A stretch of DNA of 64,000 bases from Phyllobates terribilis (taxonomy: Eukaryota): positions 257,300,001 through 257,364,000 of the forward strand of contig NW_027362767.1 in the NCBI RefSeq assembly GCF_046119375.1, read 5' to 3'. The number at the start of each line of letters is the position of its first letter. Position 1 is the first letter of the stretch. Made by a program: the position numbers and the translations under genes. Under the pieces are notes generated by a model. That model was not told the origin of the DNA, ran no database searches, and saw nothing but the letters and a program-made list of their open reading frames with translations. Below are positions 1 through 45,361 of this stretch, in pieces.

Positions 1-1266
1 GTGTATTGGCCCCTCTAACATCAATGACAGCTTGAAGTCTTTTGTGGTAGTTGTGGATGACGTTCTTTATTTTCTCGGATGGTAAAGCTGCCCATTCTTC
101 TTGGCAAAAAGCCTCCAGTTCCTGTAAATTCCTGGGCTGTCTAGCATAAACTGCGCGCTTGAGATCTCCCCAGAGTGGCTCAATGATATTGAGGTCAGGA
201 GACTGAGATGGCCACTCCAGAACCTTCACTTTGTTCTGCTGTAGCCAATGACAGGTCGACTTGGCCTTGTGTTTTGGATCCTTGTCATGTTGGAACGTCC
301 AAGTACGTCCCATGTGCAACTTCCGGGCTGATGAGTGCAAATTTACCTCCAGTATTTGCTGATAACTTTTATGGTTGTGGCCTAAAAGTTAAATTTTGGT
401 CTCATCACTCCAAATTACCTTGTTCCAGAAGTTTTGAGGCTTGTCTCTGTGCTGTTTGGCGTATTGTAGGCGAGATACTTTGTGGCATTTGCGCAGTAAT
501 TGCTTTCTTCTGGCGACTCGACCATGCAGCCCATTTTTCTTCAAGTGTCTCCTTATTGTGCATCTTGAAACAGTAACACCGCTAGTTTTCAGAGAGTCCT
601 GAATTTCACCTGATGTTATTTGTGGGTTTTTCTTTGCATCCCAAACAATTTTCCTGGCAGTTGTGGCCGAAATTTTTGTTGGTCTACCTGACTGTGGTTT
701 GGTTTTTACAGAGCCCCTGATTTTCCATTTGTTAATCACAGTTTGAACGCTACTGACTGGAATTATCAATTCCTTGGATCTTTTTTTGTATCCCTTTCCT
801 GTGTTATACAGTTCAACTACCTTTTCCCGTAGATCCGTTGACAATTCTTTTGCTTTCCCCATGACTCACATTCCAGAAACATCAGTGGCTGGATGAAAGA
901 TGCAAGAGTCTGTCTGGATCCCAGAAACTCACTCAGCTTTTATGCACATACACTGATTACAAGCAAACAGGTCACCGGTGAGGATGTTACCTTTAGTAGC
1001 CATTCAAACCCATTTGTGTCAAATTCTGTGCATGTTATCAGGCCAAAATCACCAGCATATGTGAACTTTTGATCAGGGTCATTTGGATGTTTTTGGTTGT
1101 CATTAAGATTTAAAAAGAAAAAACACAGTAGTTTGACAATAAATGGCTTCACCCAACCAATAACCATGAGTGAAGAAAAAGTTTTTTTGTTATCATTCAT
1201 ATTCTCTGAAACAAGGCCAAGAAAGGAAAAATTCTGCCGGGGTATGTAAACTTTTGAACACAACTG
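1..1266 (-). mobile_element. Tc1/mariner transposon, internally deleted, left end outside window
   Basis: ORF 389-862 is MGKAKELSTDL...WSDETKI (HTH plus first catalytic D), then a nonsense codon and a deletion. The C-terminal QHDKDPKH...SPDLNIIEPLW is readable at about 130-350. The TIR ends ...cacaactg|TA at 1266-1268. Confidence 0.92.
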
Positions 1267-1339
1267 TAAATTCAAGCTGTCCTGCAGGCTCAGGGTGCAT
1301 CAGTGTCAGAGCAAACTATACATTTGAATGAAATGAAAC

Positions 1340-2194
1340 GCCCCACTGCTGACACAGACATAAAAAAGATAGACTGCAATTTGACAAAATGTACGCGAGT
1401 AAGCCAAAATCCTTCTGGGAAAGCGTCTTGTGGACAGATGAGACCAAGATTGAGATTTTTGGTAAAGCGTATCCTTCTACTGTTTACTGAAACAGAGGCC
1501 TACAAATAAAAAAGGACACATACCTACCTACAGTCATATATGGTGGAGGTTCAAAGATGTTTTGCTGCCTCTGGCACTGGGTGCCTTTACTGTGTGCAAG
1601 GCATCATGAAATCTGAAAATCACCAAAGGATTTTGGGTTGCAATGTGGTGCCCAGTGTCAGGAAGCTGGGTTTGCGTCCTAGGTCATGGGTCTTCCAGCA
1701 GGACAATGACCCAAACATACTTCAAGAAGCCCCCAGAAATGGGTGGAAACAAAGCGCTGGAGAGTTCTGAAGTGGCAGCAATGAGTCCGGATCTGTGGAG
1801 AGATCTTACAATTACTGTTGGGAGGAGACGTCTTCATATATGAGAGACCTGGAGCAGTTTGCAAAAGAAGAGTCGTCAAAAATTCCAGCTGAGAAGTGTA
1901 AGAAGCTGCTGATGGTTATAGGAAGCGATTGATTACAGTTATTTATTCCAAAGGCTGTGCAACCAAATATTAAAGTTAAGGGCGGCAACAATTTTATCTG
2001 GCCCATTTTTGGGGTTTTGTTTGAAATTATCTCCAATTTGCCTTTTATTCCTCTGTTTTTCTGTGTTGTTCCAATACACACAAAAGAAATAAACATGTGT
2101 ATAACAAAACATGTGTAATTGTAATAATTTTCTGGGAGAAATGCTTCATTTTCTGATGCACTTTTGAGGGTGCCAACACTTTTGGCCATGACTG
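1340..2194 (+). mobile_element. Degenerate Tc1 fragment (3' half plus right TIR); same family as 22355-26202
   Basis: Frameshifted WTDETK, YGGG, FQQDNDP, SPDL and KEE..KIPAEKC motifs. The terminus is ttggccatgactg|TA. Confidence 0.85.
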
Positions 2195-2526
2195 TATATA
2201 TTAAAAAAGATGCCAGTCGCAACTAGGTGGCGCTCATTGCTATGGTGTTATACTACTATTGCAAACCTTTTGGGGGTGTATAATCCTGTGTGCAGTGAGC
2301 TCCCCCTAGTGGTGGCTGCATGTATAAACCCCTCAACATTGAAACAGCAACACCAAGGAAGAAAAGTTGTGGAGTGATGGAAATCACAGGATGGAGACGT
2401 GTTACTAATCTGAAAATTAGAAGTGGGAACTCCATACTGAATTGAGATGTTTGGAATATGTATACGCGCCACGTGCAGAAAAATCCTGGCACTTACAGCC
2501 TCGGCTGCCATCACTGAGGCTACTAA

Positions 2527-2951
2527 AGGGATTGTCCACTACTAGGACACCCTCTTCTCATTCCCCATGTTTGGCCCCATTAAAATAAAAACACCTATAC
2601 TCACCTTCGGCGCTGTTCCAGCGGTGTCGGCACTCACGTTCCCGGGACTCAGGTGAGGTTGATATGTTACGTGAGCCCTGCGCCCAATCAGCGTTGGTGT
2701 CACTGTCCGACCTTCGGACGTATTGAATATTAACAGGAAGCCGGAGCTGCAGCTGCTCTCCGAATTCCTCTTGATGTCTGATTTGACTGAAGGCGTGGAC
2801 AGTGACGCCAGCGCTGATTGGGCGCCGAGCTCGTGTGACGCAAGAACCGCACATGAGCCCCAGGACCGCGAGTGCCGACACGGGAGGAAAGTATAGGCAT
2901 TTTATTTTAACAGGGCCAAACATGAGGAATGAGACTACTTGGACAACCCCT
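2527..2951. mobile_element. T2/Kolobok-type MITE
   Basis: TIRs AGGGATTGTCCA...TGGACAACCCCT with ctaa/ttaa flanks; no coding capacity. Confidence 0.7.
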
Positions 2952-3134
2952 TTAATGGTTGTCTAAAGAGGTTCTGCCACTGAATGTACTCAAGCAAATC
3001 ATCAAGATCTGCTGTTGGCAGCTCCTGTGTAATCACTGGCCAATGAGGTCTTAGATGTGCTCTATGAGAGATAAGTCAGGAGATGCTGCAGCCATGGGAG
3101 CATGGTTAGGCCACGGACAGCATGCGACTATAAG

Positions 3135-3770
3135 TAGCGAGCTCCCCCTAGTGGTGGCTCTATAAATCAAGCCACACGCGGCGAGCTCCCCCTAGTGGGG
3201 GCTCTATAAATCAAGCCACACGCGGCGAGCTCCCCCTAGTGGGGGCTCTATAAATCCGTACGCGGCGAGCTCCCCCTAGTGGGGGCTCTATAAATCCGTA
3301 CGCGGCGAGCTCCCCCTAGTGGGGGCTCTATAAATCCGTACGCGGCGAGCTCCCCCTAGTGGTGGCTCTATAAATCCGTACGCGGCGAGCTCCCCCTAGT
3401 GGTGGCTCTATAAATCCGTACGCGGCGAGCTCCCCCTAGTGGTGGCTCTATAAATCCGTACGCGGCGAGCTCCCCCTAGTGGTGGCTCTATAAATCCGTA
3501 CGCGGCGAGCTCCCCCTAGTGGTGGCTCTATAAATCCGTACGCGGCGAGCTCCCCCTAGTGGTGGCTCTATAAATCCGTATGCGGCGAGCTCCCCCTAGT
3601 GGTGGCTCTATAAATCCGTACGTAGCAAGCTCCCCCTAGTGGTGGCTCTGTAAATCCGAATGTAGCAAGCTCCCCCTAGTGGTGGTTGTATAAATCCATA
3701 TGTAGTGCACTCTCCCTAGTGGTGGCTGCATAAATCTGTATATACTAAGCTCCCCCCGGGTGGCTGCAGG
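3135..3770. repeat. 40-bp minisatellite, about 15 copies, in NDUFB11 intron 1
   Basis: The unit gcggcgagctccccctagtggtggctctataaatccgtac repeats every 40 bp (3301, 3341, ...). Confidence 0.97.
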
Positions 3771-4643
3771 AAAACAGTATTTTATCATTTTAGTTCCAGG
3801 TCATGCATCTAGGATCTGCTTGCATGGCCTATATTACACTTTGGAAATTAGGATTTCATTAATTTTGCCCTAGTGGGCCAGGTGACTTATGAATTGGATA
3901 TGATCACTTTACGCTTCACTAGTGCAGAGAGGGATTCAAGAGTTTATTATAAAGATCCCGACACTATGGAAAAGTCCTGAAAACCCCTTCAATAGGGAAA
4001 GCTATGAATGTAAAGTAATACTCTCAGCTAATTGGTTAAGAAGGATCACATGACAATATGCAGCACAAAATGTGGTCACATGATTCATGTGTGGCCAATC
4101 ATCTGAAGGATCTATGGCAGGCTTCATTATTGGCCACATATATGGTTTCTTAGGGCATGTAGCAGTGGCCACTTTTTAACCCCTTAAAATGATTGTCCAC
4201 TACTGGACCTCCTTTATTAATGGGGACATTTTTGTACTTGCTGTGGAGATTAATCAGGTGTAGGTTTTTTTCTCCGATTGAAGAGTATTTAAAAAAAAAC
4301 TAATATATATATATAATTTTTTTTTATTTTTCAATAAACGTCGATATTTTGTGTCACTGGGATGTGAACAGCCGATCGGTCACATCAATGATCCTGTAAT
4401 ACACCTGTCGGGGTTATAGTCACAGGGGCCCTGACACTGAGGGGCGATGATGGAGCCTCACTCCCAGCCTCCCCATACCCGGCCTCATGGACAATACCAG
4501 ACACAGGCACAAGGAGGCGCTTTTCCTGCAGCCAATCAGATCTCAGCTTCTATTTCCCAGGGCGGGTTACATAGGTGAAAGCTGGAGTCTGATTGGTCAC
4601 CATGACTCCCTATAACCACCAGTAGGGGGCGCCGTGACGTTAC

Positions 4644-4829
4644 CTTGTCGTACATATTGATCTCGCCATGGTCGTCGTGCTCGTGTTTGGACGGGCTGCC
4701 ATGACTGACAGTGACCGGGGTTGTGGCCTCAGGCCGAGGAGCCGTATGAAGCTTGTATACCGGGGCCGTCCTCAGGAGCCGCGCAGCCCCGGACAACCTC
4801 AGCGCCCGCAGACACAAGGGCATCGCCAT
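4644..4829 (-). CDS. NDUFB11: NADH:ubiquinone oxidoreductase subunit B11, coding exon 1 (62 codons); remaining exons lie left of the window
   Basis: Arg/Leu/Ala-rich mitochondrial-presequence-like N-terminus followed by ...HDDHGEINMYDK and a phase-0 donor AAG|GTAACG at 4643. This matches the recalled NDUFB11 exon-1 end (human ENLYEK|NPD). The region is CpG-rich and in an Xp11-type gene neighbourhood. Confidence 0.78.
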
Positions 4830-5115
4830 GTTTGTTCTGCCCCGAGAAGAGACTCTGAAAACACCGGAAGAGGCGGGCTCCTGTCATAATCCACCTATCA
4901 GCGCTAGGGAACCGATAACCACTGGCAAATATTAACCAATAAAAAGCTTTAAATGAGTCGCTGAAAGGGGCGGGACTTGACCAATCCATGACCATAGTGA
5001 CAGACTAGCCAATCAGATGCGTAACTATAGGCGCCATCTTTACTTCGGGCAACCGTCCTTATAAAAGGCGAATGACCGCATAGGTAACTATGGAAACGTT
5101 GCCGGGCAGGTGAAG
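4830..5115. promoter_or_regulatory. Bidirectional CpG promoter shared by NDUFB11 and LZTFL1
   Basis: 286 nt separate the divergent ATGs. CCAAT at 4936, 4981 and 5009; GC box at 4967-4975; YY1-like GCCATCTT at 5033-5040; TATAAAAG at 5060-5067; X-box GTAACTATGGAAAC at 5084-5097. Confidence 0.75.
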
Positions 5116-6012
5116 ATGGCGGAGCTGGGTGAGCACCACCGCGGAGAGGTTCTTAGCTACATGCGGTTCGCTCAGTGTAAGCGGCTGCTCCGGCTGAAGA
5201 GTGTGGCGTCCTGCTTCCTGGACGTGCGGGAGAGCCGGCTGGTGGAGGACACGTACACGGCGGAGGAGGTGTCTGAGCTACTGAGCGGCCTGCAGGCGGT
5301 GGTGCTGAGCGAGCTGGAGCTGGAGCTCATCAACTCTGCGCACACCAATGTGCTGCTGCTGCAGCAGCTCTTCTCCCAGGCCCAGCACTGGCACCTGCGG
5401 CTGCACACCGACATCTCCGAGCTGGAGAACCGCCAGCTGCTGGAGCAGGTGGCCGAGCTGGAGAAGAGCCAGGAGCTGGGGCCCTCAGCCAAGGGCCCCC
5501 AGAGCAGCAAGCCCAGACTGGCCCCGCTGAGTGATGGCGGCGGCTCCGCAGACCTTCTCCACAGTCAGATCGGCCGCCTCCAGGAAGAGAACGACAAGCT
5601 CCGCGCCCGGCTCCGCACCCTGGAGAGCCAGGCCACCACCGCCCTGGACCACAAGCGCAGCGCCGAGCAGGCCCTCCAAGACCTGCAGGTCCAGGCCCAG
5701 CACAACTCCCAGGACACCCGCCACCTGGAGGACACTCGCCACCTGGAGGACACCATGGCCAACCTCAAGCTGGAGTTCCAGAAGACCCTGGTGAACCACA
5801 CGGCCAGCCAGAGAGACCTGGAGGAGAACCTGACCAAGACCAAGCACGAGCTGCTGCGGGTCAATGAGCAGCTGCTAATGGCAGAGAAGGAGCTGGACAA
5901 GAAATTCCAGGAAACCGGGGCCTACCGCAACATGAAGGACATCCTGACCCGCAAGAACGAGCAGATCAAGGAGCTGCGCCGGAGGTTGTGCAAGTACGAG
6001 CCCGAAGACTGA
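5116..6012 (+). CDS. LZTFL1: Leucine zipper transcription factor-like 1 (BBS17), single-exon intact ORF of 298 aa
   Basis: MAELGEHHRGEVLSYMRFAQ...AYRNMKDILTRKNEQIKELRRRLCKYEPED* is colinear end to end with recalled human LZTFL1 (299 aa, MAELGLNEHHQNEVINYMRFA...YEPED). The true ATG is 5116 (AAGATGG context); the ORF track started at the upstream GTG. There are no introns, stops or frameshifts. Confidence 0.95.
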   Translation: MAELGEHHRGEVLSYMRFAQCKRLLRLKSVASCFLDVRESRLVEDTYTAEEVSELLSGLQAVVLSELELELINSAHTNVLLLQQLFSQAQHWHLRLHTDISELENRQLLEQVAELEKSQELGPSAKGPQSSKPRLAPLSDGGGSADLLHSQIGRLQEENDKLRARLRTLESQATTALDHKRSAEQALQDLQVQAQHNSQDTRHLEDTRHLEDTMANLKLEFQKTLVNHTASQRDLEENLTKTKHELLRVNEQLLMAEKELDKKFQETGAYRNMKDILTRKNEQIKELRRRLCKYEPED

Positions 6013-7010
6013 GCCGGGCCCCTGACCAAAGATTTGGACCAATGGCCCCGATTGTTCTTGTGCGGGTCATCACAGTAAATGACAATAGTCTAGAAATTAT
6101 CCTGTAGCTGGACTGTTCCATGTAGAGACTTCACACGGCCGATCTCAAGCTGACTGAGTTCTCCAACCTTTCCTGATGGCTGTCCGGGCATGATGGGAAT
6201 TGTAGACCACATGGCCACCCTCAACCTGACTATGACCAGACAAGAATTCTTCTACCATGGCTGAAAAGTTGTTGGGCAAGACTGAGACTAGGGCATGGAA
6301 AGAACCAGCCCCAGACACTGCTGCCTCCCCTGTTGGTGCACATAAAGCCACAGGTTACAGGATAACTTGCCAATTCCTGGTGGTCCGTCCGCTGGGACTT
6401 TCACTCATCCCGAAAATAGGGATTCATTGTCTATGGCCCGTCGGAGATGGGGAAGCACAGCATGGCCATATCTGGTACCATAGACAATGAATGGAGTGGA
6501 GGTGTGCATATTCTACCACCATTTCTGGGATCGTTGGGGGTCTCAGTGGTTGGACTTTCACCAGTGAGTAAGTTATCTTCTACCGTATAGATGGGGACTA
6601 ACATTTGGTCTTAGGGAAATCTTTAAGGGTGCCACCTTTTAATAGCTGTCATCAGCGCACTAGTTTCCCCTACCGCTATTCTACATGCTCCATGCACACG
6701 TACACTCAGCTAGGCCAGATGTGCATGTATTCTCAGCGGGGAGGAAGCTGCTGGTGGAAGTGGGGGGGAAATACTGGGCTTTAAAATTCAACTTGTGTTT
6801 TCCCTATGTCCTCAGACATTTATGTGAGGTGCAAGTCAGGACATCCCGGTGATCAGCAGGTTCAGCAGCTTGATATGGGACAAGATCACATGTTGGTGGA
6901 TTCTGCAGGTTTCGCCTCTTGTTAGTAAGGATTTAACCCTTTGTACATTGCATCATCCACTTGTAGACTCACCTTGACATTCAGAGCAGAGATTTATGGT
7001 GAGCTCCTAA

Positions 7011-7339
7011 GGGTATGTGCACATGGCATCTTAGAGCGAGCACGCCGGCGTCTTTTTACAAGCAGAAGGTGCTTCAGGAGACCGCTGGCCGTGTTTTTCC
7101 TGAAGTGTCTTTACTGGCGTCTGTCTTTTATTTTTTTTTTAATTCCTTATATAACCTAGCGGAAGCCACTAGAATAAAGGACCGATCGCTTCTTTTAGTC
7201 ACCACACTGCTTTCGAAGCCTGAGGTTGTTAAGAGAAGTGACAAAAGAGGAAACATCGTTTTGACTTTCTATGCACGTTCATTATTTTTAGCGCTTTAAG
7301 GTGGAATCCGTCTGAAAAAGACGATGTGTGCACATATCC
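7011..7339. mobile_element. Harbinger/PIF-type MITE
   Basis: TIRs GGGTATGTGCACA...TGTGCACATATCC with TAA/TGA flanks. Confidence 0.65.
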
Positions 7340-8195
7340 TGAATCTGTGCTGTCTGGCTCATCCTACAACTCATGGGGGTCTGACCCCTCTGTACTAAGG
7401 GTCTTATTTTACTATCTTGTGTATTGCATTTATGGAACCTGTCTATAACGGATCCTCACCCACCAATGTCCATTCCTCATGGGTCAGTATAATGGCAGAG
7501 CTGGGATCAGCGGCGGTGGCTGAAGTGGAGTATACGCCAATCACACCTTTCTTTGCCATGTTTGGCTCCATATATTGTGTTCCTACCTGTCATGACTTTA
7601 AAGGCCTTTTTTTTTTTTTGAAGCGCCCATGTAGCCCTGACCTTCAGTGGTGGTCCTTCCCCATCTAATCTTCAGGCCATCCTCCATCTGCTGATACATG
7701 GATTTGTGACTTATGATTTTTCTGTTTCTGCATTACTCATTTCATTAAACCGTTTTTTTTTTTTCTGATGCTTAATATGTGGTTTGTGTTTATTTTTTAT
7801 TTATTTTTTTATCTACGAGATTCCGCCCCCCTCCAAGAAGAAAAGCATCAAGGTCTTATTTCCATGACCCCGAAGAAAGCCATCTCAGTAGTAAAATACG
7901 CTAATCAGTAGATGCATTATTTTCCCCCAATATCGTTATGTAACACCATAGTCTGCAGGACCTAGAGTGGTGGTCTCCCATGTGAGCTTCAATACAGCAG
8001 CGAGACCCTACACCTGGCACACTGAGGTGGAGAGAAGCAATGTGACGCTGATGCAGATCACCCATCTTGTCGGCAGCGTTAATCATTCTCGGGAGCTCAC
8101 ATTTTTTTAAACATTTTATTTCACACAAACATCACACTGAGCAGGGAAAACTGTACAAAGCTGAAATACATGGGTTCTCCAGGAGAAATGGATCC

Positions 8196-11100
8196 TTATT
8201 CCAGGGGTTTAGCGCGAGAGGCTTCGGCGTTAGCCCTTAACACGGCCCCCGGACTGGGATATGGCCTCTGCTGAAACAAGGGTCCTGCAGCTGTGGTGTC
8301 TGCTCCAGTTTTGGCCTCGTTTCTTTTGGGAAGTCCAGTAGACCAAGTGCCTCTAGAAACAGCAATGCAAACAGTGGGATTACAATCCTATTAGAATGGT
8401 TTCCTTTCCAAGTTGTAGTTATCTGGTAAGAAGTCTAAGTACACCCAACTCCACCAGCAGAATAGTGAGTGCAGCTCTGGAGTATAATACAGGATGTAAC
8501 TCAGGATCAGTACAGGATAAGTAATGTATGTACACAATGACTGCACCAGCAGAATAGTGAATGCAGCTCTGGAGTATAATACAGGATGTAACTCAGGATC
8601 AGTACAGGATAAGTAATGTAATGTATGTACACAGAGACTGTACCAGCAGAATAGTGAGCGCAGCTCTGGGGTAGAATACAGGATGTAACTCAGGATCAGT
8701 ACAGAATAAGTAATGTATGTACACAATGACTCCACCAGCAGAATATTGAGTGCAGCTCTGGGGTATAATACAGGATGTAACTCAGGATCAGTACAGGATA
8801 AGTAATGTAATGTATGTACACAGTGACTCCACCAGCAGAATAGTGAGTGCAGCTCTGGAGTATAATATATGATGTAACTCAGGATCAGTACAGGATAAGT
8901 AATGTAATGTATGTACACAGTGAATCCACCAGCAGAATAGTGAGTGCAGCTCTGGAGTATAATATAGGATGTAACTCAGGATCACTACAGGATCAGTAAT
9001 GTAATGTATGTACACAGTGACTGCACCAGCAGAATAGTGAGTGCAGCTCTGGGGTATAATACAGGATGTAACTCAGGATCAGTACAGGATAAGTAATGTA
9101 ATGTATGCACACAGTGACTGCACCCGCAGAATAGTGAGTGCAGCTCTGGAGTATAATACAGGATGTAACTCAGGATCAGTACAGCATAAGTAATGTAATG
9201 TATGTACACAGTGACTACACCAGCAGAATAGTGAGCGCAGCTCTGGAGTATTAGGCTGCGTGCCCACTTTGCGTTTTTCAAGCGTTTTTGCCCCATGGTC
9301 CCCAGTGATAATCCGCATGTGCTGTGCACATGCTGCGGATTATCATTGCGGAAGAATACGCAGCATGTCAATTAATTTTGCGGACACGCAGCGTAATTGC
9401 CGCCATTGACTTGCATTGGACCGCGTGACATCAGCATCACTGCATCTGCACAAGTGGATATCACACGGTTCAATGTGCGGATGGTACCCGGGTTTGGAGA
9501 AGATGAGACTCTCCTCTGGACCCGGGTACCATAGAAACTGTAAAAAAAAAAGAAGAATTTAAAATAAAAAATAAAGATTATACTTACCTTCCGATGTCCT
9601 CCCGGTGTTTTCTCCAATCCGTCTGGTCTGCTGTATGGGTCGCGTTGTTGTGAAGGACCTGCCATGACGTCATTGAGTCATGTGACCTGTCACACAACTC
9701 AATGACGTCACCGCAGGTCCTTCACACCACCACAAGCCGCCCAAAACACCGGGAGGACATCGGAAGGTAAGTATAATCTTTATTTTTTACCATTCTTATT
9801 CTTTTTTTTTTTTTTTTTTTTTTTAACTAACTTGGTCACACTACTATAAATTCATGCCGGTTGCATGGATTTATATAGTGTGACCAAGTTATCAAGCACT
9901 TTTGGGGACAACCCGCATGCAGAAATGCATGCAAAAACGCATGACAAACGCTTCTACCTGGCGGGAAAAACGCATGTAAAAACCGCATGCGTTTTTCCTG
10001 CCAGGGAGAAGCGGAAAAAATATGCAGCATTTCTGCATCGTGGGCACATAACCTAATACAGGATGTAACTCAGGATCAGTACAGGATAAGTAATGTAATG
10101 TATGTACACAGTGACTGCACCAGCAGAATAGTGAGTGCAGCTCTGGAGTATAATACAGGATGTAACTCAGGATCAGTAATGTAATGTATGTGCACAGTGA
10201 AGGCACCAGCAGAATAGTGAGTGCAGCTCTGGAGTATAATACAGGATGTAACTCAGGATCAGTAATGTACAGTCATGGCCAAAAGTATTGAGAATGAGAC
10301 AAATAGTAATTTTTCCAAAGTTTACTGCTTCATTTTTTGTAATGGCAATTTGCATATACACCTGAATGTCAAAGAGTGATCAGCTTAACAGCAATTACTG
10401 TACTTGCAAAGTCAATATTTGCCCAGAAAATGAACTTTAACCCCCAAAACACATTTCAACATCATTGCAGTCCTGCCTTAAAAGGAGCAGCTAACATCGT
10501 TTTAGTGATTGATCCATTAACACAGGTGTGGGTGTTGATGAGGACAGGGCTGGCGATCAATCAGTCATGATTAAGTAAGAATGACATCACTGGACACTTT
10601 AAAAGGAGGCTGGTTCTTGGTATCATTGTTTCTCTTCAGTTAACCATGGTTATCTCTAAAGAAACACATGCAGCCATCATTGCACTGCACAAAACTGGCC
10701 TAACAGGGAAGAGTATCGCAGCTACAAAGATTGCACCTCAGTCAACAATCTATCGCATCATCAAGAACTTCAAGGAGAGAGCTTCCATTGTTGTCAAAAA
10801 GGCTCCAGGGCGCCCAAGAAAGACCAGCATGCGCCAGGACCGTATCTTAAAACTGTTTCAGCTGCGGGATCGGACTACCAGCAGTGCCGAGCTTGCTCAG
10901 GAATGGCAGCAGGCTGGTGTGAGTGCTTCTGCACGCACTGTGAGGCGGAGACTCTTTGAGCAAGGGCTGGTTTCAAGGAGGGCAGCAAAGAAGCCACTTC
11001 TCTCCAGAAAAAACATCAGGGACCAACTGATATTCTGCAAAAGGTACAGAGAGTGGACTGCTGAGGACTGGGGCAAAGTCATTTTCTCTGATGAATCCCC

Positions 11101-14100
11101 TTTTCGATTGTTTGGGACATCTGGAAAACAGCTTATTCGGAGAAGAAGAGGTGAGCGCTACCACCAGTCTTGTCTCATGCCAACTGTAAAGCATCCTGAA
11201 ACCATTCATGTGTGGGGTTGCTTCTCAGCCAAGGGAATCGGCTCACTCACAGTCTTGCCTAAAAACACAGCCATGAATAAAGAATGGTACCAGAATGTCC
11301 TCCAAGAGCAACTTCTCCCAACCGTCCAAGAGCAGTTTGGCGCCCAACAATGCCTTTTCCAGCATGATGGAGCACCTTGCCATAAAGCAAAGGTGATAAC
11401 TAAATGGCTCATGGAACAAAACAGAGATTTTGGATCCATGGCCTGGAAACTCCCCAGATCTTAATCCCATTGAGAACTTGTGGTCAATCATCAAGAGACG
11501 GGTGGACAAACAAAAACCAACAAATTCTGGCAAAATGCAAGCATTGATTATGCAAGAATGGACTGCTATCAGTCAGGATTTGGTCCAAAAGTTGATTGAG
11601 AATTACAGAGGTCTTGAAGAAGAAGGGGCAACACTGCAAATATTGACTTGCTGCATTAACTCATTCTAACTGTCAATATAACCTATTGGTACTCATAATA
11701 TGATTGCAATTATATTTCTGTATGTGATATAAACATCAGACAAACACTAATAAAAACCAGAGGCCAGCAGATCATGTGAAAATATAATTTTGGTGCCATT
11801 CTCAAAACTTTTGGCCATGACTGTAACGTATGCACAGTGTCTCTGTAGCGGCGGCGTCTCTGCCCCCTGCCAGGTAGAGACGCCGTCCCCCTTACCACCG
11901 CGGTCCTGCTCCGGCGTCGTCCCGCCTCCCTGCTGTTGGTGCGCGCAGCTTCCCCGGCACTGTGCTTAGGGCGCACGCGCGCTCCCTCCCTCTTAAAGGG
12001 GCCGCGCGCGCCGTCCTAAAAAGTCCCCGGCCAATGGCCGGAGGACTTTCTCTATGAAAGGCACCTCCTCCAATATGGAGGTGCCCGTGCAAGGTTGTTG
12101 CTCTGTGATACTTACTTTGCTTCAGCCCTCAGGTCCTCTGCAAGTCAGTCCTGTCCGCCAGTCTGCCTACAGTCCAGTCCGCCAGTCGGTCTATGGTCTC
12201 TGCCCGCCTGCTTACCTGGAAGCACCTGCCTGTTACCTGCCGTGCCCACCTGCCTGCTTACCTTGAAGCACCTGCCTGTTACCTGTTGTGCCCACCAGCT
12301 TGCCTACCCGGAGCACCTGTCTGGCTATCAGCCGAATCAGCCAGCCTGACTACCTGGACCACCAGTCAGCCTGCCTGCCGTGCTCTTCCGCTGTACTGGT
12401 CAGTTCCTGCCTTCTGACCCGTCGGAGTCACCTGCTCTCATACAAGGTCGGTCCCAGAGTGGCACCTGGTCCCTCTGCTCGGTCCCTCCCTGGTTCACGG
12501 AGTCAACTGAGCCGCCGTGCAACCTTGGTCAGGCCGAGTAGATACTTAGTCACGCCCCTCTGGTCCCTCCTTGCACCACAGCACAGAGGTTCCATCACCC
12601 AGATCCGTAACAGTCTCCACCAGCAGAATAGTGAGTGCAGCTCTGGAGTACAATACAGGATGTAACTCAGGATCAGTGCAGGATCAGTAATGTAATGTAT
12701 GTACACAGTGATTGCACCAGCAGAATAGTGAGTGCAGCTCTGGAGTATAATACAGGATATAACTCAGGATCAGTACAGGATAAGTAATGTATGTACACAG
12801 TGACTGCACCAGCAGAATAGTGAGTGCAGCTCTGGAGTACAATACAGGATGTAACTCAGGATCAGTGCAGGATCAGTAATGTATGTACACAGTGACTGCA
12901 CCAGCAGAATAGTGAGTGCAGCTCTGGGGTATAATACAGGATGTAGCTCAGGATAAGTAATGCAAGTATACTGACTGCAGCTCTGGCATACCTTGGAGCA
13001 TCAGAATAAGCACTTGGATCCATGGGATCGATCTCTTCTTCTTTTCTCCCTATGAAAAGAGAAACTATGGTTATTCTACCTACTCTTCTAGCAGAGAACC
13101 TGTTTACAATCTGTTGGTGAGGCACCTTTTTTGGGTTTCTGATATGGAGCAATTTCTTCTCTTCGGATATGTCTCCTCTCCTTGATCTCTTCCCTCTCTG
13201 GCCTTTCTGGCTTCTCCGGCCGCTCCTCTGAGTCTGAAAAGTGTAATTCGTCTATGAATATTAAGAGAATATAACAGGAAAAAAGCTACAAATTGTTGTT
13301 ACCTTTCTGTTTAGAAGGGCATTTAGTGAGGATAGCATTGGGGTCATGTGGGGATAACCAGGACACCATATCTGTCTCCACATTCCAGTAATACGGGAGA
13401 CCACTGTGCAGAAGGGGGGAAAAATACAAAATAATTCACATCTCCTGTCACAGGTTAAGAAGACCCTGATATAACTGATACCAAGACCATCACCAGCCAC
13501 AATCCACACATCAGCACCGAGATCACCATCATCATCCCATGTGATGTATGCATGATAAGGACCACTATGGTGTATAGACTAACCATCATTACAGAGATCA
13601 CCGGTATCACTAGCTCTCCGTGATCACCATTATCCCAGGTACTGACCCTCCATCTTACTAGACCCTGCCCTATGGTTCTCCCTCATCACTAAACATGACC
13701 TCAGCCATGTCCACTGTCACCATATATACATCACTTTGGAGATCATGATCATCACAAGATACTGCTTATATATCTACCTGGTCAAAACTAGACCAAAAGC
13801 ATCCCCCACCAGCGACTCCGCGCCCCCCCCCCCACCTACCTGTGTACATAACAGACGTACAGAGCAGAGCTGTCATTGACCACAGATGCCAACACATGTA
13901 GCTGCCCTTACATAGTCACTTGGCATCCATGTACAGAGCCTGTTCAGTTGCAGATCCTCACCATATCAGGTCATACACCTTGTACCAGTTAGGAGGGAGA
14001 TTCTCTATCCGCGTAGCCTCGTAGTCCACGTTGTCATCATCATAGTCTTCAGCAATGACCTCCTCTGCCGCCTCTGGGGAAGCACATATAGAAGACGTCA

Positions 14101-14545
14101 GTGCCGATTAGCTAAACAATGTTAAAAATACAATTTATTCACCATTTTTAAGATGTCTGTCTGCTGTCAGTGAATGGTAACATTCAGAGCCAAAATGTCC
14201 AGCTGACTCAGAGGCCGTAACGAGTGCATCAGAGCACTCTGGTTACTACCTCTGCACCTGGGTGTGATCAGGAGAGGTTTGCAGGTCACAAATGTTTCCA
14301 TTCACATGCAGCACGCAGAGATCTAGAAACGGTGGCATATTAGAGAGTCACAGAACTTTTCATTTCACTCTCAGTACCCTCGAGTTATAAGGAATGAGAG
14401 AGGTAGCGGTCCTCCGGGTCTCAGCAGCGGGTCACCAGTGTGTGGTGTAGGCTGTGCTCTCAGGGCGCCACAACTTACCAGCTTCCACGTGTTTCAGGAT
14501 CCCTCTTTTTGCCAATCGAGCTTGAAGGGCCAAAGGCAGCGGCAT
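8196..14545 (-). CDS. PQBP1: Polyglutamine-binding protein 1, 200 aa. Coding exons 14545-14479, 14073-13962, 13403-13303, 13233-13126, 13049-12992, 8352-8196; non-coding exon 1 ends at 15394, exon 2 acceptor at 14560
   Basis: The spliced product reads [21 protein letters not shown]..., WW domain [87 protein letters not shown]. All introns are GT-AG with compatible phases and the CDS totals 603 nt. Confidence 0.97.
9254..10054. mobile_element. Harbinger/PIF-type MITE, related to 51847-52692
   Basis: TIRs GGCTGCGTGCCCAC...GTGGGCACATAACC with TTA/TAA flanks. Internal blocks are shared with the 51.8-kb copy (gcagcatgtcaattaattttgcg, aatgtgcggatggtaccc). Confidence 0.8.
10270..11823 (+). mobile_element. 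Full-length Tc1 with frameshifted DD34E transposase (10646 to about 11650)
   Basis: TA|cagtcatggccaaaag...cttttggccatgactg|TA. Motifs FSDES, FQHDGAP and [11 protein letters not shown] are present, with a frameshift before WPGNSPDL. Confidence 0.95.
11844..12612. mobile_element. Solo LTR, 769 bp
   Basis: Termini TGTAGCGG...CCGTAACA, flanked by a 5-bp direct repeat GTCTC (11839-11843 and 12613-12617) inside a minisatellite unit. Confidence 0.8.
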
Positions 14546-14699
14546 CACGAGTCACCAACCTGCAGATGTAGACACTGGTGAGCGGTGCCAGCCCCAAAAT
14601 GTGCCCCGACCCCACACTGCTGTATAATACCACTGCTCCTGAAGGCACCAGGGTGTGGGGACCCTCCGCACCCCTTTAGCTCCACCACTGCCCCACACT

Positions 14700-15609: not shown

Positions 15610-27015
<11,406 letters not shown>

Positions 27016-27512: not shown

Positions 27513-29943
27513 AGTAACATAGTTTTTAAGGTTGAAGGAAGACTAAAGGCCCCGTCACACTTAGCGACGCTGCAACGATCCCGACAACGATACGACCTGT
27601 CAGGGATCGTTGCTGCGTCGTTATGTGGTCGCTGGTGAGCTGTCAAACAGGCAGGCTCACCAACGATCAGGGGAGCAGCGACATCGTGGAAAGAATCTTT
27701 CCACGATGTCCTGCTCCTGGTTACCAGCCTGCTGAAGCAGGAGCAGGCTGGTAACTATGGTAAACATCGGGTTACTAGGGGCACACGCGCTCCTAGTAAC
27801 CCGTTGTTTATCATGGTTACCACTCTGCTACAGTGAGCGGGAGGTTACCGCTCACTTTAGCAGGCTCGTAACCATGATAAACAACGGGTTACTAAGTGCG
27901 CGTGTGCCCCTAGTAACCCGATGTTTACCATAGTTACCAGCCTGATCGCTGCTCCCGCTGGTCACACACAGCGATGTGTGCTGACCAGCGGGAGGGCAAC
28001 GACCAAAAAATGGTCCAGGACACTTTGCAGCGATCAGCGACCTCACAGCAGGGGCCTGATCGCTGCAAAGTGTCACACATAGCGACATCGCTGGTGAGGT
28101 CGCTGTTGCGTCCCCAAAACCGTGACACAGCAGCGATCTCACTAGCGATCTCGCTATGTGAGACGGGGGCTTAAGTCCACCTAGTTCAACCCATAGCCTA
28201 ACATGTTGATCCAGAGGAAGGCAAAAAAAAAAACATGTGGCAAACACTAAGCTCCACATTGGGGAAAAAAATTCCTTCCCGACTCCATACGACAATCAGA
28301 CTAGTTCCCTGGATCAAGGCCCTATCAAGGAATCTAGTATATATAACCTGTAATATTATACTTTTCAAGAAAGGCATCCAGGCCCTTCTTAAATGTTAGT
28401 AGTGAATCACTCATTACAACATCATGCGGCAGAGAGCTCCATAGTCTCACTGCTCTTACAGTAAAGAATCCCCGTCTGTGATTATGATTAAACCTTCTTT
28501 CCTCCAGACGTAGAAGATGCCCCCTTGTCCCCGTCTCAGGCCTCAGAGTCAAAAGATCAGTAGAAAGGTCTTTGTACTGTCTCCTCATATACTTGTACAT
28601 AGTAATAAGATCACCCCTAAGCCTGTGTTTTTCCAACGTAAATAACCCCAAGTGTAATAACCTGTCTTGGTATTGCAGACACCCAGTCCTCTAATAACCT
28701 TGGTCGCTCTTCTCTACACCCGCTCTATGTCTTTCTTATACACCGGAGACCAGAACTGTACACAGTATTCTAAGTGTGGTCGCACTAGTGACTTGTATAG
28801 AGGTAAAATTATGTTCTCCTCATGAGCATCTATGCCTCTTTTAATGCATCCCATTATTTTATTTGCCCTTGTAGCAGCAGCCTGACACTGGCCACCAAAC
28901 GTGAGATTGTCATCCACCAATACACCCAGGTCATTTTCAGTTACAGTTTTGCCCAGTGTTTTACAATTAAGCATATAATTATACATTTTATTTCCTCTGC
29001 CCAAGTGCATTACCTTACAATTATCCCCATTAAAGCTCATTTGCCATTTATCAGCCCAAGCTTCTAGTTTACATAGATCCTCCTGTAATATAAATTTGTC
29101 CTCCTCTGTATTGATTACCCTGCTGAGTTTAGTGTCATCTGTAAATATTGAAATATTACTCTGTATGCCCCCTACAAGGTCATTAATAAATATGTTAAAA
29201 AGAAGCAGGCCCAATACTGACCCCTGTAGTACCCCACTGTTAACTGAGACTCAGTCTGAGTGTGTTCCATTAATAACCACCCTTTGTTTCCTATCACTGA
29301 GCCAGTTCTTAACCCACATACATATATTTTCCTCTATCCCCATTGTTCTCATTTTATGCATCAACCCTTTGTGTGGAACCGTATCAAAAGCTTTTGCAAA
29401 GTCCATATACACAACATCCACTGCATTTCCTTGGTCCAGTCCAGAACTTGCCTCCTCATAAAAACTGATCAGATTAGTTTGACAGGAACGGTCCCTCGTA
29501 AACCCATGTTGATATTGGGTCATGAGGTTATTCTTCTTCAGATACTCTATTATAGCATCTCTTAGGAAACCCTCCAGGATTTTACCCACAGTAGAGGTTA
29601 AGCTTACTGGCCTATAATTTCCAAGTTCAGTTTTTGTCCCCTTTTTGAATATTGGCACCACATTTGCTATACGCCAGTCCTGTGGTACAGACCCTGTTAT
29701 TATGGAATCTTTAAAGATTAAAAATAATGGTTTATCTATGACGTTACTTAATTCCTGCAGTACTCGCGGGTGTATCCCATCCGGGCCCGGGGATTTGTCA
29801 ACTTTAGTGATTTTTAGACGCCGCTGTACTTCCCGCTGGGTTAAGCAAGTGACATTTACTGGAGAATTTTTGTTATCACTGATCATGTTTTCTGTCATGC
29901 GATTCTCTTGTGTAAATACGGTTGAAAAAAAATAATTTAGCAT
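27511..29943 (-). mobile_element. 5'-truncated CR1 LINE (RT domain, frameshifted)
   Basis: SPGPDGIHPRVL, NYRPVSLTS, QHGF...RSCQTNL, YMDFAKAFDTVPH, FTDDTKL and RPHLEYCVQFWSP. The 3' hairpin ggttgaac...ttcaacct is followed by an atagtaac-type tail. Confidence 0.96.
27547..28171. mobile_element. Harbinger-type MITE inserted in the CR1 3' UTR
   Basis: TAA|aggcccgtcacac...gtgagacgggggct|TAA with internal palindromes. Confidence 0.8.
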
Positions 29944-41175: not shown

Positions 41176-41884
41176 CTGAAAGCCGGCCATACAGATAAGA
41201 TCGACCGATGATGAACCATTGACCAATCACCCATAAAAACTGGACTCATTCCGTATTTCTACACTGGAAGTGAGATACACCATGAACATGATGTGTTTTC
41301 TGCATCCATTACTATGGGCCATGTCTGGTATTCATTCAGTTGTAGTACCATTAATATCCTATGCATAGGAGTGGCGCTGTGTCAGGAAAAACAGAGCTGA
41401 CCTATTGTATGTCCAATCTCCTACAACCTGTATGCATAAAAGTGCTTCTAGGAGCAAATTCCGTAACGGTCTCTTTAAATAAAAAAAGGCTCCATCATTG
41501 GTGATAACGTGTGGCAGCGTTACATGTGAATGAGGCCGGAGATGGATTGAAGAATTGCTGGAGCCTCTCGGTGCTCTAGTGCTCCCATCCTGCCCCCTCC
41601 TATTGTGCTCAGACAAGACAAACATTCCTTACTCCTTATTTTCTCTCTTCTTACTTTATCTGAATTAGGACTTGACAAGTGGGAATTTATAAAAGTGCAA
41701 TCTGCCTGCAGAACGTAAATGAGCAGCAGCAGCGTAAGGCAAATTCTCTGCACGGGATTTCTCTGGGGACAAAGACACTTCCAATGGGCAAGAAAGCTTC
41801 AGGTTGCACAGAGCAAGCTGTATCCCAACCGAGACGGAGCACAGCTTCCATCTAATATCATATATAGCAGTGTCCACAATGCCG

Positions 41885-44800: not shown

Positions 44801-45360
44801 GGAACCTGGGCATCTCCTGTATATAATGATACATGCACGGCCGGTGGAACCTGGGCATCTCCTGTATATAATGATACATGCACGGCCGGTGGAACCTGGG
44901 CATCTCCTGTATATAATGATACATGCACGGCCAGTGTAACCTGGGCATCTCCTGTATATAATGATACATGCACGGCCAGTGTAACCTGGGCATCTCCTGT
45001 ATATAATGATACATGCACGGCCAGTGTAACCTGGGCATCTCCTGTATATAATGATACATGCATGGCCAGTGTAACCTGGGCATCTCCTGTATATAATGAT
45101 ACATGCACGGCCAGTGTAACCTGGGCATCTCCTGTATATAATGATACATGCACGGCCAGTGTAACCTGGGCATCTCCTGTATATAATGATACATGCACGG
45201 CCAGTGTAACCTGGGCATCTCCTGTATATAATGATACATGCACGGCCAGTGTAACCTGGGCATCTCCTGTATATAATGATACATGTACAGCCGGTATAAC
45301 CTGGGCATCTCCTGTATATAATGATACATGTACAGCCAGTGTAACCTGGGCATCTCCTGT
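41885..45360. repeat. 45-bp minisatellite, about 77 copies; continues at 46954-47190 beyond the Tc1
   Basis: Unit acctgggcatctcctgtatataatgatacatgcacggccggtgga. The 15-codon period explains the long ORFs. Confidence 0.98.
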
Positions 45361-45361
45361 T

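What the first reader, a model, noticed from the sequence alone, without database searches (positions are those of the whole stretch)
4644..6012. Intact intronless LZTFL1 (BBS17) head-to-head with NDUFB11: probable functional retrogene
Seen: a full 298-aa LZTFL1 ORF without introns starts 286 nt from the NDUFB11 ATG on the opposite strand. It differs substantially from the recalled human protein yet has no stop or frameshift, and no poly(A) tail or TSD is visible. Known: human LZTFL1 is a multi-exon BBSome/Hedgehog trafficking regulator on 3p21, human NDUFB11 is head-to-head with RBM10, and retrocopies often survive by capturing bidirectional CpG promoters. Inference: an old retrogene under selection, either a second copy or a replacement for the parental gene.
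Basis: partly seen in the sequence, partly recalled or inferred. Interest (0 to 1): 0.82.

Follow-up and report, generated by a model that had tools for sequence, protein, structure and literature searches.

The report
Frog cilia gene replaced by retrocopy
This poison-frog relative carries an intact, transcribed, intron-free copy of the cilia-trafficking gene LZTFL1 (BBS17) beside the NDUFB11 promoter, and this intron-free form is the only LZTFL1 found in the annotated proteins of the 'modern' frogs (Neobatrachia) examined, so a retrocopy seems to have replaced the original gene.

Summary
Window 5116-6012 (+) is an uninterrupted 298-aa ORF with a full-length Pfam Leu_zip match. Its ATG lies 286 nt from the NDUFB11 ATG on the opposite strand.

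RNA contigs from four runs show an unspliced mRNA of about 2.5-2.7 kb. The codon-model omega is 0.07-0.20, and omega = 1 is rejected.

- **Intron-free state:** the coding sequence has no introns in every neobatrachian frog examined. It has 10 coding exons in Spea and spans 98 kb in Pelobates.
- **Single origin:** all neobatrachian copies form one clade (100/100) on a very long stem. They share a 2-aa deletion and GC3 of 0.90-0.94, against 0.34 in Spea.
- **Parent apparently lost:** no parent-type protein from any neobatrachian appears among the best matches to the Pelobates gene.
- **Second move:** the site beside NDUFB11 is specific to hyloid frogs. Mixophyes has an empty PQBP1-like/NDUFB11 interval and keeps its LZTFL1 on another chromosome. 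The gene therefore moved at least twice.
- **Regulatory motif:** an RFX X-box-like motif sits just upstream of the ATG at both kinds of locus.

This is a new, apparently unreported example of a known kind, the orphan retrogene. The scan noted a similar replacement (UHRF1) elsewhere in this genome. Parent loss in this particular genome was not tested.

The parts
4644..4851 (-). NDUFB11 exon 1 (CDS 4829-4644, 62 aa; 5' UTR to at least 4851). Exons 2-3 lie outside the window.
   Evidence: ORF and GT donor. RNA contigs at depth 600-1570 end at 4644 and continue into exon 2 sequence that is absent from the window. Hyloid NDUFB11 proteins are 72-90% identical.
4830..5051 (.). Ancestral compact NDUFB11 promoter, now shared by both genes. 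It holds an ETS/GABP-like CCGGAAG (4862-4877), CCAAT boxes (4936-4940, 4981-4985, 5009-5013) and a YY1-like GGCGCCATCTTTACTTCGGGC (5030-5050). CpG o/e is 0.94.
   Evidence: It aligns with the region upstream of NDUFB11 in Mixophyes, which has no LZTFL1 there. It is conserved among hyloids. CpG profile. Factor names are inferred from consensus motifs.
5052..5115 (+). 5' edge of the hyloid-specific inserted unit and the 5' UTR. It holds a TATA-like TATAAAAGG (5060-5068) and an X-box-like GTAACTATGGAAAC (5084-5097).
   Evidence: Homology to the Mixophyes empty site stops right after the YY1-like element. RNA contigs start at 5024, 5062, 5090 and 5091. X-box scan.
5116..6012 (+). Intronless LZTFL1 (BBS17) coding sequence, 298 aa plus stop. 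GC3 is 0.91.
5713..5748 (+). In-frame 18-nt tandem duplication (DTRHLE x2). One RNA run carries an E211K allele at 5746.
   Evidence: Sequence, alignment A1, variant table.
6013..7757 (+). 3' UTR of about 1.75 kb with an ATTAAA signal at 7744-7749. The mRNA ends near 7757.
   Evidence: Colinear RNA contigs without joints reach 7516-7757. Signal read from the sequence.
8102..8369 (-). Last exon and poly(A) site of the neighbouring PQBP1-like WW-domain gene. This is the distal anchor of the insertion.
   Evidence: RNA contigs at depth 250-550 with a T-run loose end at 8102. Window 8358-8109 is 76% identical to Mixophyes L008 9029-9290, E 6e-48.

Best explanation
The ORF is the working LZTFL1 (BBS17) gene of this frog, and it descends from a processed (intron-free) copy. 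The most likely history has four steps.

1. In the stem lineage of Neobatrachia, a spliced LZTFL1 mRNA was copied back into DNA.
2. That copy took over and the 10-exon parent was lost. The copy then went through a burst of change: a protein stem branch of 0.58 substitutions per site, and GC3 rising from about 0.34 to about 0.9.
3. In the stem of Hyloidea, the already intron-free gene was inserted a second time. A unit of about 2.6-2.7 kb, matching its transcript, landed in the short interval between the 3' end of a PQBP1-like gene and the NDUFB11 promoter. It sits in divergent orientation, about 20 nt beyond the distal YY1-like element.
4. The older copy was lost in hyloids.

Today the gene is transcribed as an unspliced mRNA of about 2.5-2.7 kb, starting 170-240 bp from the NDUFB11 start region. 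It probably uses the shared CCAAT/YY1/ETS promoter together with an RFX X-box-like motif that it carries just upstream of its ATG. The protein keeps the full Leu_zip domain and is presumed to regulate BBSome and Smoothened traffic in cilia as in mammals.

Shown here: the intact ORF, transcription, selection, the derived intron-free state, a single clade, the filled versus empty site, and the GC shift. Inferred: an RNA intermediate for each move, loss of the parent in this genome, use of the X-box and promoter, and the protein's function.
For: - **Identity and integrity:**
- **Transcription:** four RNA runs from two studies hold colinear contigs from 5024-5091 to 7516-7757 at depth 18-47, with no joints. 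NDUFB11 intron 1 and the 7923-8071 spacer have about zero depth, and NDUFB11 is spliced, so this is RNA and not contaminating DNA.
- **Selection:** omega is 0.07 (GY+F3X4), 0.15 (MG) and 0.20 (F1X4) among five neobatrachian copies. Omega = 1 is rejected (LRT 448, p 2e-99). Every one of the many indels is in frame.
- **Derived intron-free state:** the coding span equals the ORF length in Anomaloglossus, Bufo, Eleutherodactylus, Mixophyes, Rana, Ranitomeya, Mantella and an unnamed hyloid. Pelobates spans 97.6 kb, and Spea has 10 coding exons over 28.5 kb.
- **Single origin:** 19 neobatrachian rows form one clade (100/100) with a stem of 0.58. They share a 2-aa deletion and 23 fixed replacements.
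- **Parent loss:** no neobatrachian protein is among the 120 best matches (72% identity or more) to the Pelobates parent.
- **Composition:** GC3 is 0.90-0.94 against 0.34 in Spea. Of the fixed replacements, 12 raise GC at codon positions 1-2 and 2 lower it (p 0.013). This fits the report that functional retrogenes gain GC (PMC7181179).
- **Hyloid-specific site:** Mixophyes NDUFB11 lies on a different chromosome from Mixophyes LZTFL1. Its locus reads Tim17 | WW gene | NDUFB11. About 490 bp separate the two anchors there, against 3,058 bp in the window. Gastrophryne has no Leu_zip gene called in the same interval. Rana LZTFL1 has no called neighbour within 10 kb.
- **X-box:** the motif sits 17-19 nt upstream of the ATG in hyloids and in Mixophyes, and a perfect match lies 148 nt upstream of the ATG in the Spea parent.
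Against: - No poly(A) remnant or target-site duplication is visible at either edge. Given the age this is expected, but the RNA intermediate of the second move is therefore unproven.
- The genomic site of the copy in Mixophyes and in ranoids could not be identified. No genes or Pfam hits lie within 7-10 kb. In-situ loss of all introns at the parental locus is therefore not excluded for the first step.
- Parent loss rests on annotated proteomes of other species. This genome itself could not be searched.
- The tree places the neobatrachian clade beside the caecilians (91/78) instead of beside the other frogs. This is probably a long-branch effect.
- In the window the X-box-like motif has two mismatches to the consensus.
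- Contig ends only approximate the transcription start.
Confidence: 0.78

Rival explanations
1. Independent retropositions. A fast-evolving multi-exon parent persisted into early neobatrachian diversification and was retrocopied separately in hyloids (beside NDUFB11) and in the Mixophyes and ranoid lineages. The parent was then lost in each lineage.
For: The copies lie at different loci, on different chromosomes within Mixophyes. No flank homology was found between hyloid, Mixophyes and Mantella loci.
Against: All copies share the long stem, the 2-aa deletion, GC3 near 0.9, and the X-box-like motif at -17 to -19 from the ATG, against -148 in Spea. A spliced parent would have had to acquire all of these first, for no evident reason. 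No such parent is annotated in any neobatrachian.
Confidence: 0.08
2. The move to NDUFB11 was DNA-mediated. The intron-free gene reached the NDUFB11 promoter by segmental duplication, transposition or rearrangement, and not by a second reverse transcription.
For: No poly(A) tail or target-site duplication is visible. An intron-free source gene leaves no intron-based way to tell RNA from DNA.
Against: The extra DNA relative to the Mixophyes empty site is about 2.6 kb, which matches the transcript (5024/5062 to 7757). Its proximal edge lies within about 40 nt of the mapped contig starts. Homology between copies at different loci starts only about 40 nt upstream of the ATG.
Confidence: 0.2
3. The first step was in-situ loss of all nine coding-sequence introns at the parental locus, by recombination with a cDNA. 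Only the hyloid copy is then a true relocation.
For: The Mixophyes and ranoid loci are uncharacterised, so they could be the parental locus.
Against: No similarity was found between the Spea parental flanks and the Mixophyes or Mantella flanks, apart from one transposon-like piece. Simultaneous loss of nine introns spread over 28-98 kb is rare in vertebrates (general knowledge).
Confidence: 0.12
4. The gene is a second copy, not a replacement. The multi-exon parent still exists in this genome and has simply been missed.
For: This genome could not be searched. The scan's notes do not mention LZTFL1 elsewhere, which is uninformative.
Against: About 18 neobatrachian species each contribute only the intron-free type to the protein database, including several named by NCBI's pipeline. 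None appears among the parent-type hits.
Confidence: 0.1

Closest known systems
Vertebrate LZTFL1 / BBS17 (Pfam PF15294 Leu_zip)
   Same: Full-length domain match, same length (298 aa) and 58-65% identity to Spea, Pelobates, Xenopus, Ascaphus, salamander, caecilian, tortoise and hyena LZTFL1. It nests inside the vertebrate LZTFL1 tree.
   Different: No introns (10 coding exons in Spea). GC3 is 0.91 against 0.34. A 2-aa N-terminal deletion and 23 fixed replacements at otherwise conserved positions. A different genomic neighbourhood, TIMM17B / PQBP1-like / NDUFB11.
'Orphan' retrogenes that replaced their parents (Ciomborowska et al. 2013, PMC3548309; e.g. CHMP1B)
   Same: The retrocopy is the only family member found, is under strong purifying selection, and was annotated for years without being recognised as a retrocopy.
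   Different: The lineage is Neobatrachia and the gene is a Bardet-Biedl gene. The copy appears to have moved a second time, and it shows an extreme GC3 shift. Absence of the parent is shown only at the annotation level.
Retrogenes that recruit bidirectional CpG promoters
   Same: Head-to-head with a housekeeping gene, start regions about 170-240 bp apart, and CCAAT/YY1/ETS-type motifs that predate the insertion.
   Different: The copy also brings its own X-box-like motif, and in some hyloids a TATA-like box, so it may not depend on the host promoter alone.
GC enrichment of functional retrogenes (Mordstein et al. 2020, PMC7181179)
   Same: The intron-free functional copy is much more GC-rich at synonymous sites than the spliced parent, and more GC-rich than its flanks.
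   Different: The size of the shift (+0.57 in GC3) is far larger than the average shift reported for mammalian pairs. GC-biased gene conversion was not separated from selection here.

Membership tests
LZTFL1/BBS17 (Leu_zip, PF15294) | Full-length match to the family profile above the curated cut-off | tested here: met
   349.9 bits against a cut-off of 28.2; profile positions 1-275 of 275.
LZTFL1/BBS17 (Leu_zip, PF15294) | Orthology: nests within vertebrate LZTFL1 and is the only family member per species | tested here: met
   Tree; one protein type per neobatrachian species.
LZTFL1/BBS17 (Leu_zip, PF15294) | Binds BBS9 and restrains BBSome/Smoothened entry into cilia | not testable with these tools
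   Function is known from mammals (general knowledge). Only conservation was seen here: 90 invariant columns across tetrapods.
Processed retrocopy / retrogene | Lacks all introns of the parental coding sequence | tested here: met
   Nine coding-sequence intron positions mapped in Spea; the window ORF is continuous through all of them. The RNA shows no joints.
Processed retrocopy / retrogene | Sits at a locus different from the parent's, with an empty site in relatives | tested here: met
   Filled site in the window against an empty site in Mixophyes, with anchors on both sides. This applies to the hyloid insertion. The first insertion site is unknown.
Processed retrocopy / retrogene | Poly(A) tract at the 3' end and flanking target-site duplication | tested here: not met
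   A T-run, not an A-run, follows 7757. The longest flanking direct repeat is 7 nt. Both features are expected to have eroded at this age, so this is not disqualifying.
Orphan retrogene (parent replaced) | The retrocopy is functional: expressed and under purifying selection | tested here: met
Orphan retrogene (parent replaced) | The parental gene is absent from the genome | tested here: inconclusive
   No parent-type protein from any neobatrachian. Neither this assembly nor any other was searched at the DNA level.
Bidirectional promoter pair | Divergent genes with start sites less than 1 kb apart, both transcribed | tested here: met
   NDUFB11 contigs reach 4851 and LZTFL1 contigs start at 5024-5091.
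RFX-regulated ciliary gene | X-box (GTNRCC N0-3 RGYAAC) near the start site | tested here: inconclusive
   The window motif has 2 mismatches. E. coqui, the unnamed hyloid and Mixophyes have 1 mismatch at the same position. The Spea parent has a perfect match. The background rate is 0.04-0.44 hits per kb. RFX binding was not tested.

The most novel reading that the evidence does not exclude
LZTFL1 in modern frogs may be a 'portable' ciliary gene. Its mRNA would carry its own RFX X-box in the 5' UTR, so each reverse-transcribed copy arrives with ciliary regulation built in. That would have allowed serial replacement: parent, then a first retrogene in stem Neobatrachia, then a second at the NDUFB11 promoter in stem Hyloidea. 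It may belong to a wider burst of parent-replacing retrogenes in the neobatrachian stem, since the scan also notes UHRF1 and candidates TIPRL, PPIL1 and CEP43 in this genome. The extreme GC3 rise would then be the price of expressing an essential gene without splicing.
Probability: 0.3. Interest if true: 0.72.

Novelty: new member of a known kind. Interest (0 to 1): 0.55.

Why it matters
LZTFL1 is a Bardet-Biedl syndrome gene (BBS17). In the large majority of living frog species it appears to exist only as a retrocopy, with a different promoter, no introns, a recoded sequence (GC3 0.34 to 0.9) and 23 changed positions that are otherwise conserved from frogs to mammals.

This has three consequences.

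- **A natural experiment.** It gives a dated test of what an essential spliced gene must change to survive without splicing, and of how a retrocopy obtains regulation: a borrowed bidirectional promoter plus an X-box it carries with it.
- **A caution for model work.** Regulatory findings from Xenopus, which is expected to have the ancestral multi-exon gene (its protein groups with the parent type; its gene structure was not looked up), should not be transferred to ranid, bufonid, hylid or dendrobatid frogs.
- **A rare genomic change.** The filled or empty NDUFB11 site marks Hyloidea, and the intron-free state marks Neobatrachia.

Together with the scan's UHRF1 note, the finding points to a possible episode of retrogene replacement at the base of Neobatrachia that merits a genome-wide census.

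Tried and rejected
- **NDUFB11 exon 1 near the Mixophyes and Mantella copies:** searched at both strict and very lax thresholds and found only noise.
- **Flank comparisons:** six-frame and blastn comparisons among hyloid, Mixophyes, Mantella and Spea loci found only the ORF, transposons and satellites.
- **Pfam on flanking ORFs:** ten ORFs flanking the Mixophyes and Mantella copies gave no hits, so those loci stay unidentified.
- **Target-site duplication and poly(A):** none found.
- **NDUFB11 exon 2:** not in the window.
- **Pairwise dN/dS:** NG86 gave 0.33-0.45 and pairwise ML gave 0.02-0.10 with saturated dS. I did not rely on either. I used joint codon models under three frequency settings.
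- **Ranoid NDUFB11:** the word-based search found only hyloids and myobatrachids. A representative-library search then gave Gastrophryne, but without DNA, so that empty site rests on gene calls only.
- **Literature:** searches for LZTFL1 with retrogene, amphibian retrogene replacement, and Neobatrachia with retrocopies found no prior description.
- **The scan's own notes:** they hold nothing under 'LZTFL1'.
- **Rejected readings:** assembly or cDNA contamination is ruled out, because the same gene with the same flanks appears in many independent assemblies and genomic contigs. A pseudogene is ruled out by the open frame, the low omega and the transcription evidence.
- **Not attempted:** structure prediction was not run, because the sequence evidence was already sufficient.
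Full report
**Observation.** The window holds an uninterrupted ORF at 5116-6012 on the plus strand, 298 aa from the ATG, with an in-frame GTG two codons upstream. It matches Pfam Leu_zip (PF15294), the LZTFL1 family, over the whole profile at E 1.4e-104.

On the minus strand, NDUFB11 exon 1 starts at 4829 and ends at 4644 with a GT donor. The ORF is far more GC-rich (0.62-0.66) than its surroundings (0.40-0.50). No A-rich tail or flanking duplication is present.

**It is transcribed.** Four runs from two studies of what appears to be the same organism were laid on 3900-8350.
- NDUFB11 exon 1 is covered at depth 600-1570. Every contig leaves the genome at 4644 and continues into sequence encoding NPDWHGFSND, which is exon 2 and is not in the window.
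- Intron 1 has essentially no depth. The libraries are therefore RNA with little DNA.
- In each run a contig colinear with the genome runs from 5024, 5062, 5090 or 5091 to 7516-7757 at depth 18-47, without any joint.
- An ATTAAA signal lies at 7744-7749.

LZTFL1 is thus expressed as an unspliced mRNA of about 2.5-2.7 kb with a 3' UTR of about 1.7 kb. Its level is roughly 1/30 to 1/50 of NDUFB11. A third transcript, from a PQBP1-like WW-domain gene on the minus strand, ends with poly(A) at 8102.

**The intron-free state is derived and shared by Neobatrachia.** The best protein matches are dendrobatoid frogs: Anomaloglossus at 90%, and Ranitomeya at 97% over a truncated model. Other hyloids follow at 82-86%, then ranoids and Mixophyes at 65-72%. 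All are named simply LZTFL1 by their sources.

Gene tables show a coding span equal to the ORF length in Anomaloglossus, Bufo gargarizans, Eleutherodactylus coqui, Mixophyes fleayi, Rana temporaria, Ranitomeya imitator, Mantella aurantiaca and an unnamed hyloid. In contrast, the Pelobates gene spans 97.6 kb and the Spea gene 28.5 kb. I mapped 10 coding exons in Spea, with introns after residues 1, 43, 108, 127, 151, 173, 199, 258 and 293. The window protein aligns straight through all nine positions.

**One origin, then a burst.** In a maximum-likelihood tree of 50 LZTFL1 proteins, all 19 neobatrachian rows form one clade with 100/100 support. The stem branch is 0.58 substitutions per site. 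For comparison, the whole root-to-tip path of the other frogs is 0.11-0.21.

The clade shares a 2-aa deletion after MAE. It also shares 23 replacements at positions otherwise conserved from Spea to hyena. Its placement beside the caecilians (91/78) is most likely a long-branch effect.

After the stem, hyloid branches are short (0.04-0.13), so constraint returned. Ranoids and E. coqui evolve faster.

**Selection.** Joint codon models on five neobatrachian coding sequences give omega of 0.07 (GY+F3X4), 0.15 (MG+F3X4) and 0.20 (GY+F1X4). Fixing omega at 1, 0.5 or 0.3 is rejected, with LRT values of 448, 256 and 142. The many indels among the copies are all in frame. Pairwise NG86 values (0.33-0.45) are inflated by the extreme codon bias, and pairwise ML values suffer from saturated dS.

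**Composition.** GC3 is 0.90-0.94 in the window, E. coqui, Mixophyes, Mantella and the unnamed hyloid, against 0.34 in the Spea coding sequence. GARP residues rise from 0.14 to 0.20-0.28, and FYMINK residues fall from 0.27 to 0.11-0.16. Of the 23 fixed replacements, 12 raise and 2 lower GC at codon positions 1-2 (p 0.013). Part of the protein burst is therefore compositional.

This agrees in direction with the finding that functional retrogenes, but not retro-pseudogenes, become more GC-rich than their spliced parents, and that unspliced mRNAs need GC for expression (PMC7181179). GC-biased gene conversion is an untested alternative or contributor.

**Replacement.** A search with the Pelobates parent protein returned other non-neobatrachian frogs (Pelodytes, Leptobrachium, Spea, Ascaphus, Bombina, Discoglossus, Xenopus, Hymenochirus). 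After these came turtles, salamanders, caecilians, mammals and fishes at 72% identity or more. No neobatrachian protein appeared among the 120 best hits.

Each neobatrachian species contributes only the intron-free type. This fits the 'orphan retrogene' pattern (PMC3548309). It is annotation-level evidence, and I could not search this genome's DNA.

**The NDUFB11 site is a later, hyloid-specific insertion.** In Bufo, E. coqui and Anomaloglossus the order is NDUFB11(-) | LZTFL1(+) | ~200-aa gene(-) | Tim17(+). NDUFB11 exon 1 lies head-to-head with LZTFL1 in the window, E. coqui and the unnamed hyloid, but not within 10 kb in Mixophyes or 6.9 kb in Mantella.

Mixophyes NDUFB11 is on chromosome record CM076011.1, while its LZTFL1 is on CM076003.1. 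The Mixophyes NDUFB11 locus reads Tim17 | WW-domain gene | NDUFB11, with nothing between.

Three anchors align that locus to the window:
- the WW gene's last exon and 3' end (window 8358-8109, 76% identity, E 6e-48);
- the NDUFB11 start region (window 4876-4759, 79%);
- a 20-nt YY1-like element about 200 nt upstream of the NDUFB11 ATG in both species (window 5032-5051).

Between the outer anchors Mixophyes has about 490 bp and the window has 3,058 bp. The excess of about 2.6 kb equals the LZTFL1 transcript unit. Homology to the empty site stops right after the YY1-like element, about 10 nt before the TATA-like box and about 30 nt before the X-box-like motif.

In the ranoid Gastrophryne, the WW gene and NDUFB11 are 3.7 kb apart with no Leu_zip gene called. 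No DNA was available to check this. Rana LZTFL1 has no called neighbour within 10 kb.

On the accepted frog phylogeny, in which Myobatrachoidea is closer to Hyloidea than Ranoidea is (general knowledge), the NDUFB11 position arose on the hyloid stem. Whether that move went through RNA is inferred from the match between insert and transcript. It is not proven.

**Promoter anatomy.** The 4830-5051 segment carries an ETS-like CCGGAAG, three CCAAT boxes and the YY1-like element. All have counterparts upstream of NDUFB11 in Mixophyes. They therefore predate the insertion and belong to a compact, CpG-rich promoter (CpG o/e 0.94).

The insert contributes TATAAAAGG (5060-5068), which is present in the window and the unnamed hyloid but not in E. 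coqui. It also contributes an X-box-like motif.

| Species | Motif | Mismatches | Position relative to ATG |
|---|---|---|---|
| E. coqui, unnamed hyloid | GTAACCATGGAAAC | 1 | 19 nt upstream |
| Mixophyes | GTGTCCATGGTAAC | 1 | 17 nt upstream |
| Window | GTAACTATGGAAAC | 2 | 5084-5097, 18 nt upstream |
| Mantella | motif at the same place | 2 | same position (not computed) |
| Spea (parent) | GTAACCCTAGGTAAC | 0 | 148 nt upstream |

The Spea match is the only perfect one in its 48.5-kb locus. The background rate is 0.04-0.44 hits per kb at one mismatch or fewer.

Because the motif sits at the same offset in copies on different chromosomes, it travelled with the gene. The window's RNA contigs that start at 5024 and 5062 include it. 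RFX dependence is an inference.

**Limits.**
- The site of the first intron-free copy is unknown, so in-situ loss of all introns cannot be excluded for step one.
- The parent's absence was not tested on DNA.
- The strand of the RNA contigs is inferred from the ORF and the poly(A) signal.
- Tissue origin of the runs is unknown.
- Protein function is assumed from conservation.

**Comparison and verdict.** This is LZTFL1 by every sequence test. By structure and history it is a retrogene of the orphan kind, with two additions of interest: a second relocation onto a pre-existing bidirectional promoter, and a very large GC3 shift.

No paper in the searchable library describes it, although databases already list the gene under the ordinary name. 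Notes of this scan report a similar replacement of UHRF1 in the same genome, plus further candidates. I did not test them. If they hold, the phenomenon is broader than one gene.

I rate this a new member of a known kind, of moderate interest.

Noticed in passing
window 3150-3800; L001 ~400-5000 and 8600-8800: A GC-rich minisatellite with a ~40-nt period (CpG o/e about 1) lies in NDUFB11 intron 1. A look-alike 41-nt array lies in the same intron of Eleutherodactylus coqui.
   Followed up: no
window 5713-5748 and 5746: An in-frame 18-nt tandem duplication (DTRHLE x2) lies inside the LZTFL1 ORF. One RNA run carries G>A at 5746 (E211K) within it, and a synonymous C>A at 5980.
   Followed up: partly
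L002 4300-9600 (Mixophyes): A GC-rich (0.64), CpG-free satellite of more than 5 kb starts about 400 bp upstream of the Mixophyes LZTFL1 ATG. That gene lies about 2.2 Mb from the end of a 464-Mb chromosome record.
   Followed up: no
window 8102-8369, 12991-13068, 13289-13429, 13961-14095, 14474-14551 (minus): These are exons of a ~200-aa PQBP1-like WW-domain gene conserved with Mixophyes. It is highly expressed, with a poly(A) site at 8102 and an AATAAA signal at 8115-8120 on the minus strand.
   Followed up: partly
window 41600-45400, 49600-51100, 54100-64000: Large tandem satellite arrays produce very long spurious ORFs in several frames.
   Followed up: no
window 389-862, 10646-11464, 18839-19924, 45764-46585; 28714-29943: Tc1/mariner-type transposase ORFs and reverse-transcriptase fragments. 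One mariner-like piece also occurs in the Mixophyes locus L002 at 18300-19300.
   Followed up: no
other pieces of this genome (scan notes s1-204883, s1-209076, s1-237579, s1-230083): The scan's notes list other intact intron-free genes in this genome (UHRF1, TIPRL, PPIL1, CEP43). UHRF1 was judged by a follow-up to have replaced its parent in modern frogs. This may point to a burst of orphan retrogenes.
   Followed up: no
L001 10001-10843 (E. coqui): The E. coqui copy is shortened to 280 aa by in-frame deletions. It has the longest terminal branch (0.41) and the highest GC (0.70; GC3 0.94), yet it remains open.
   Followed up: partly
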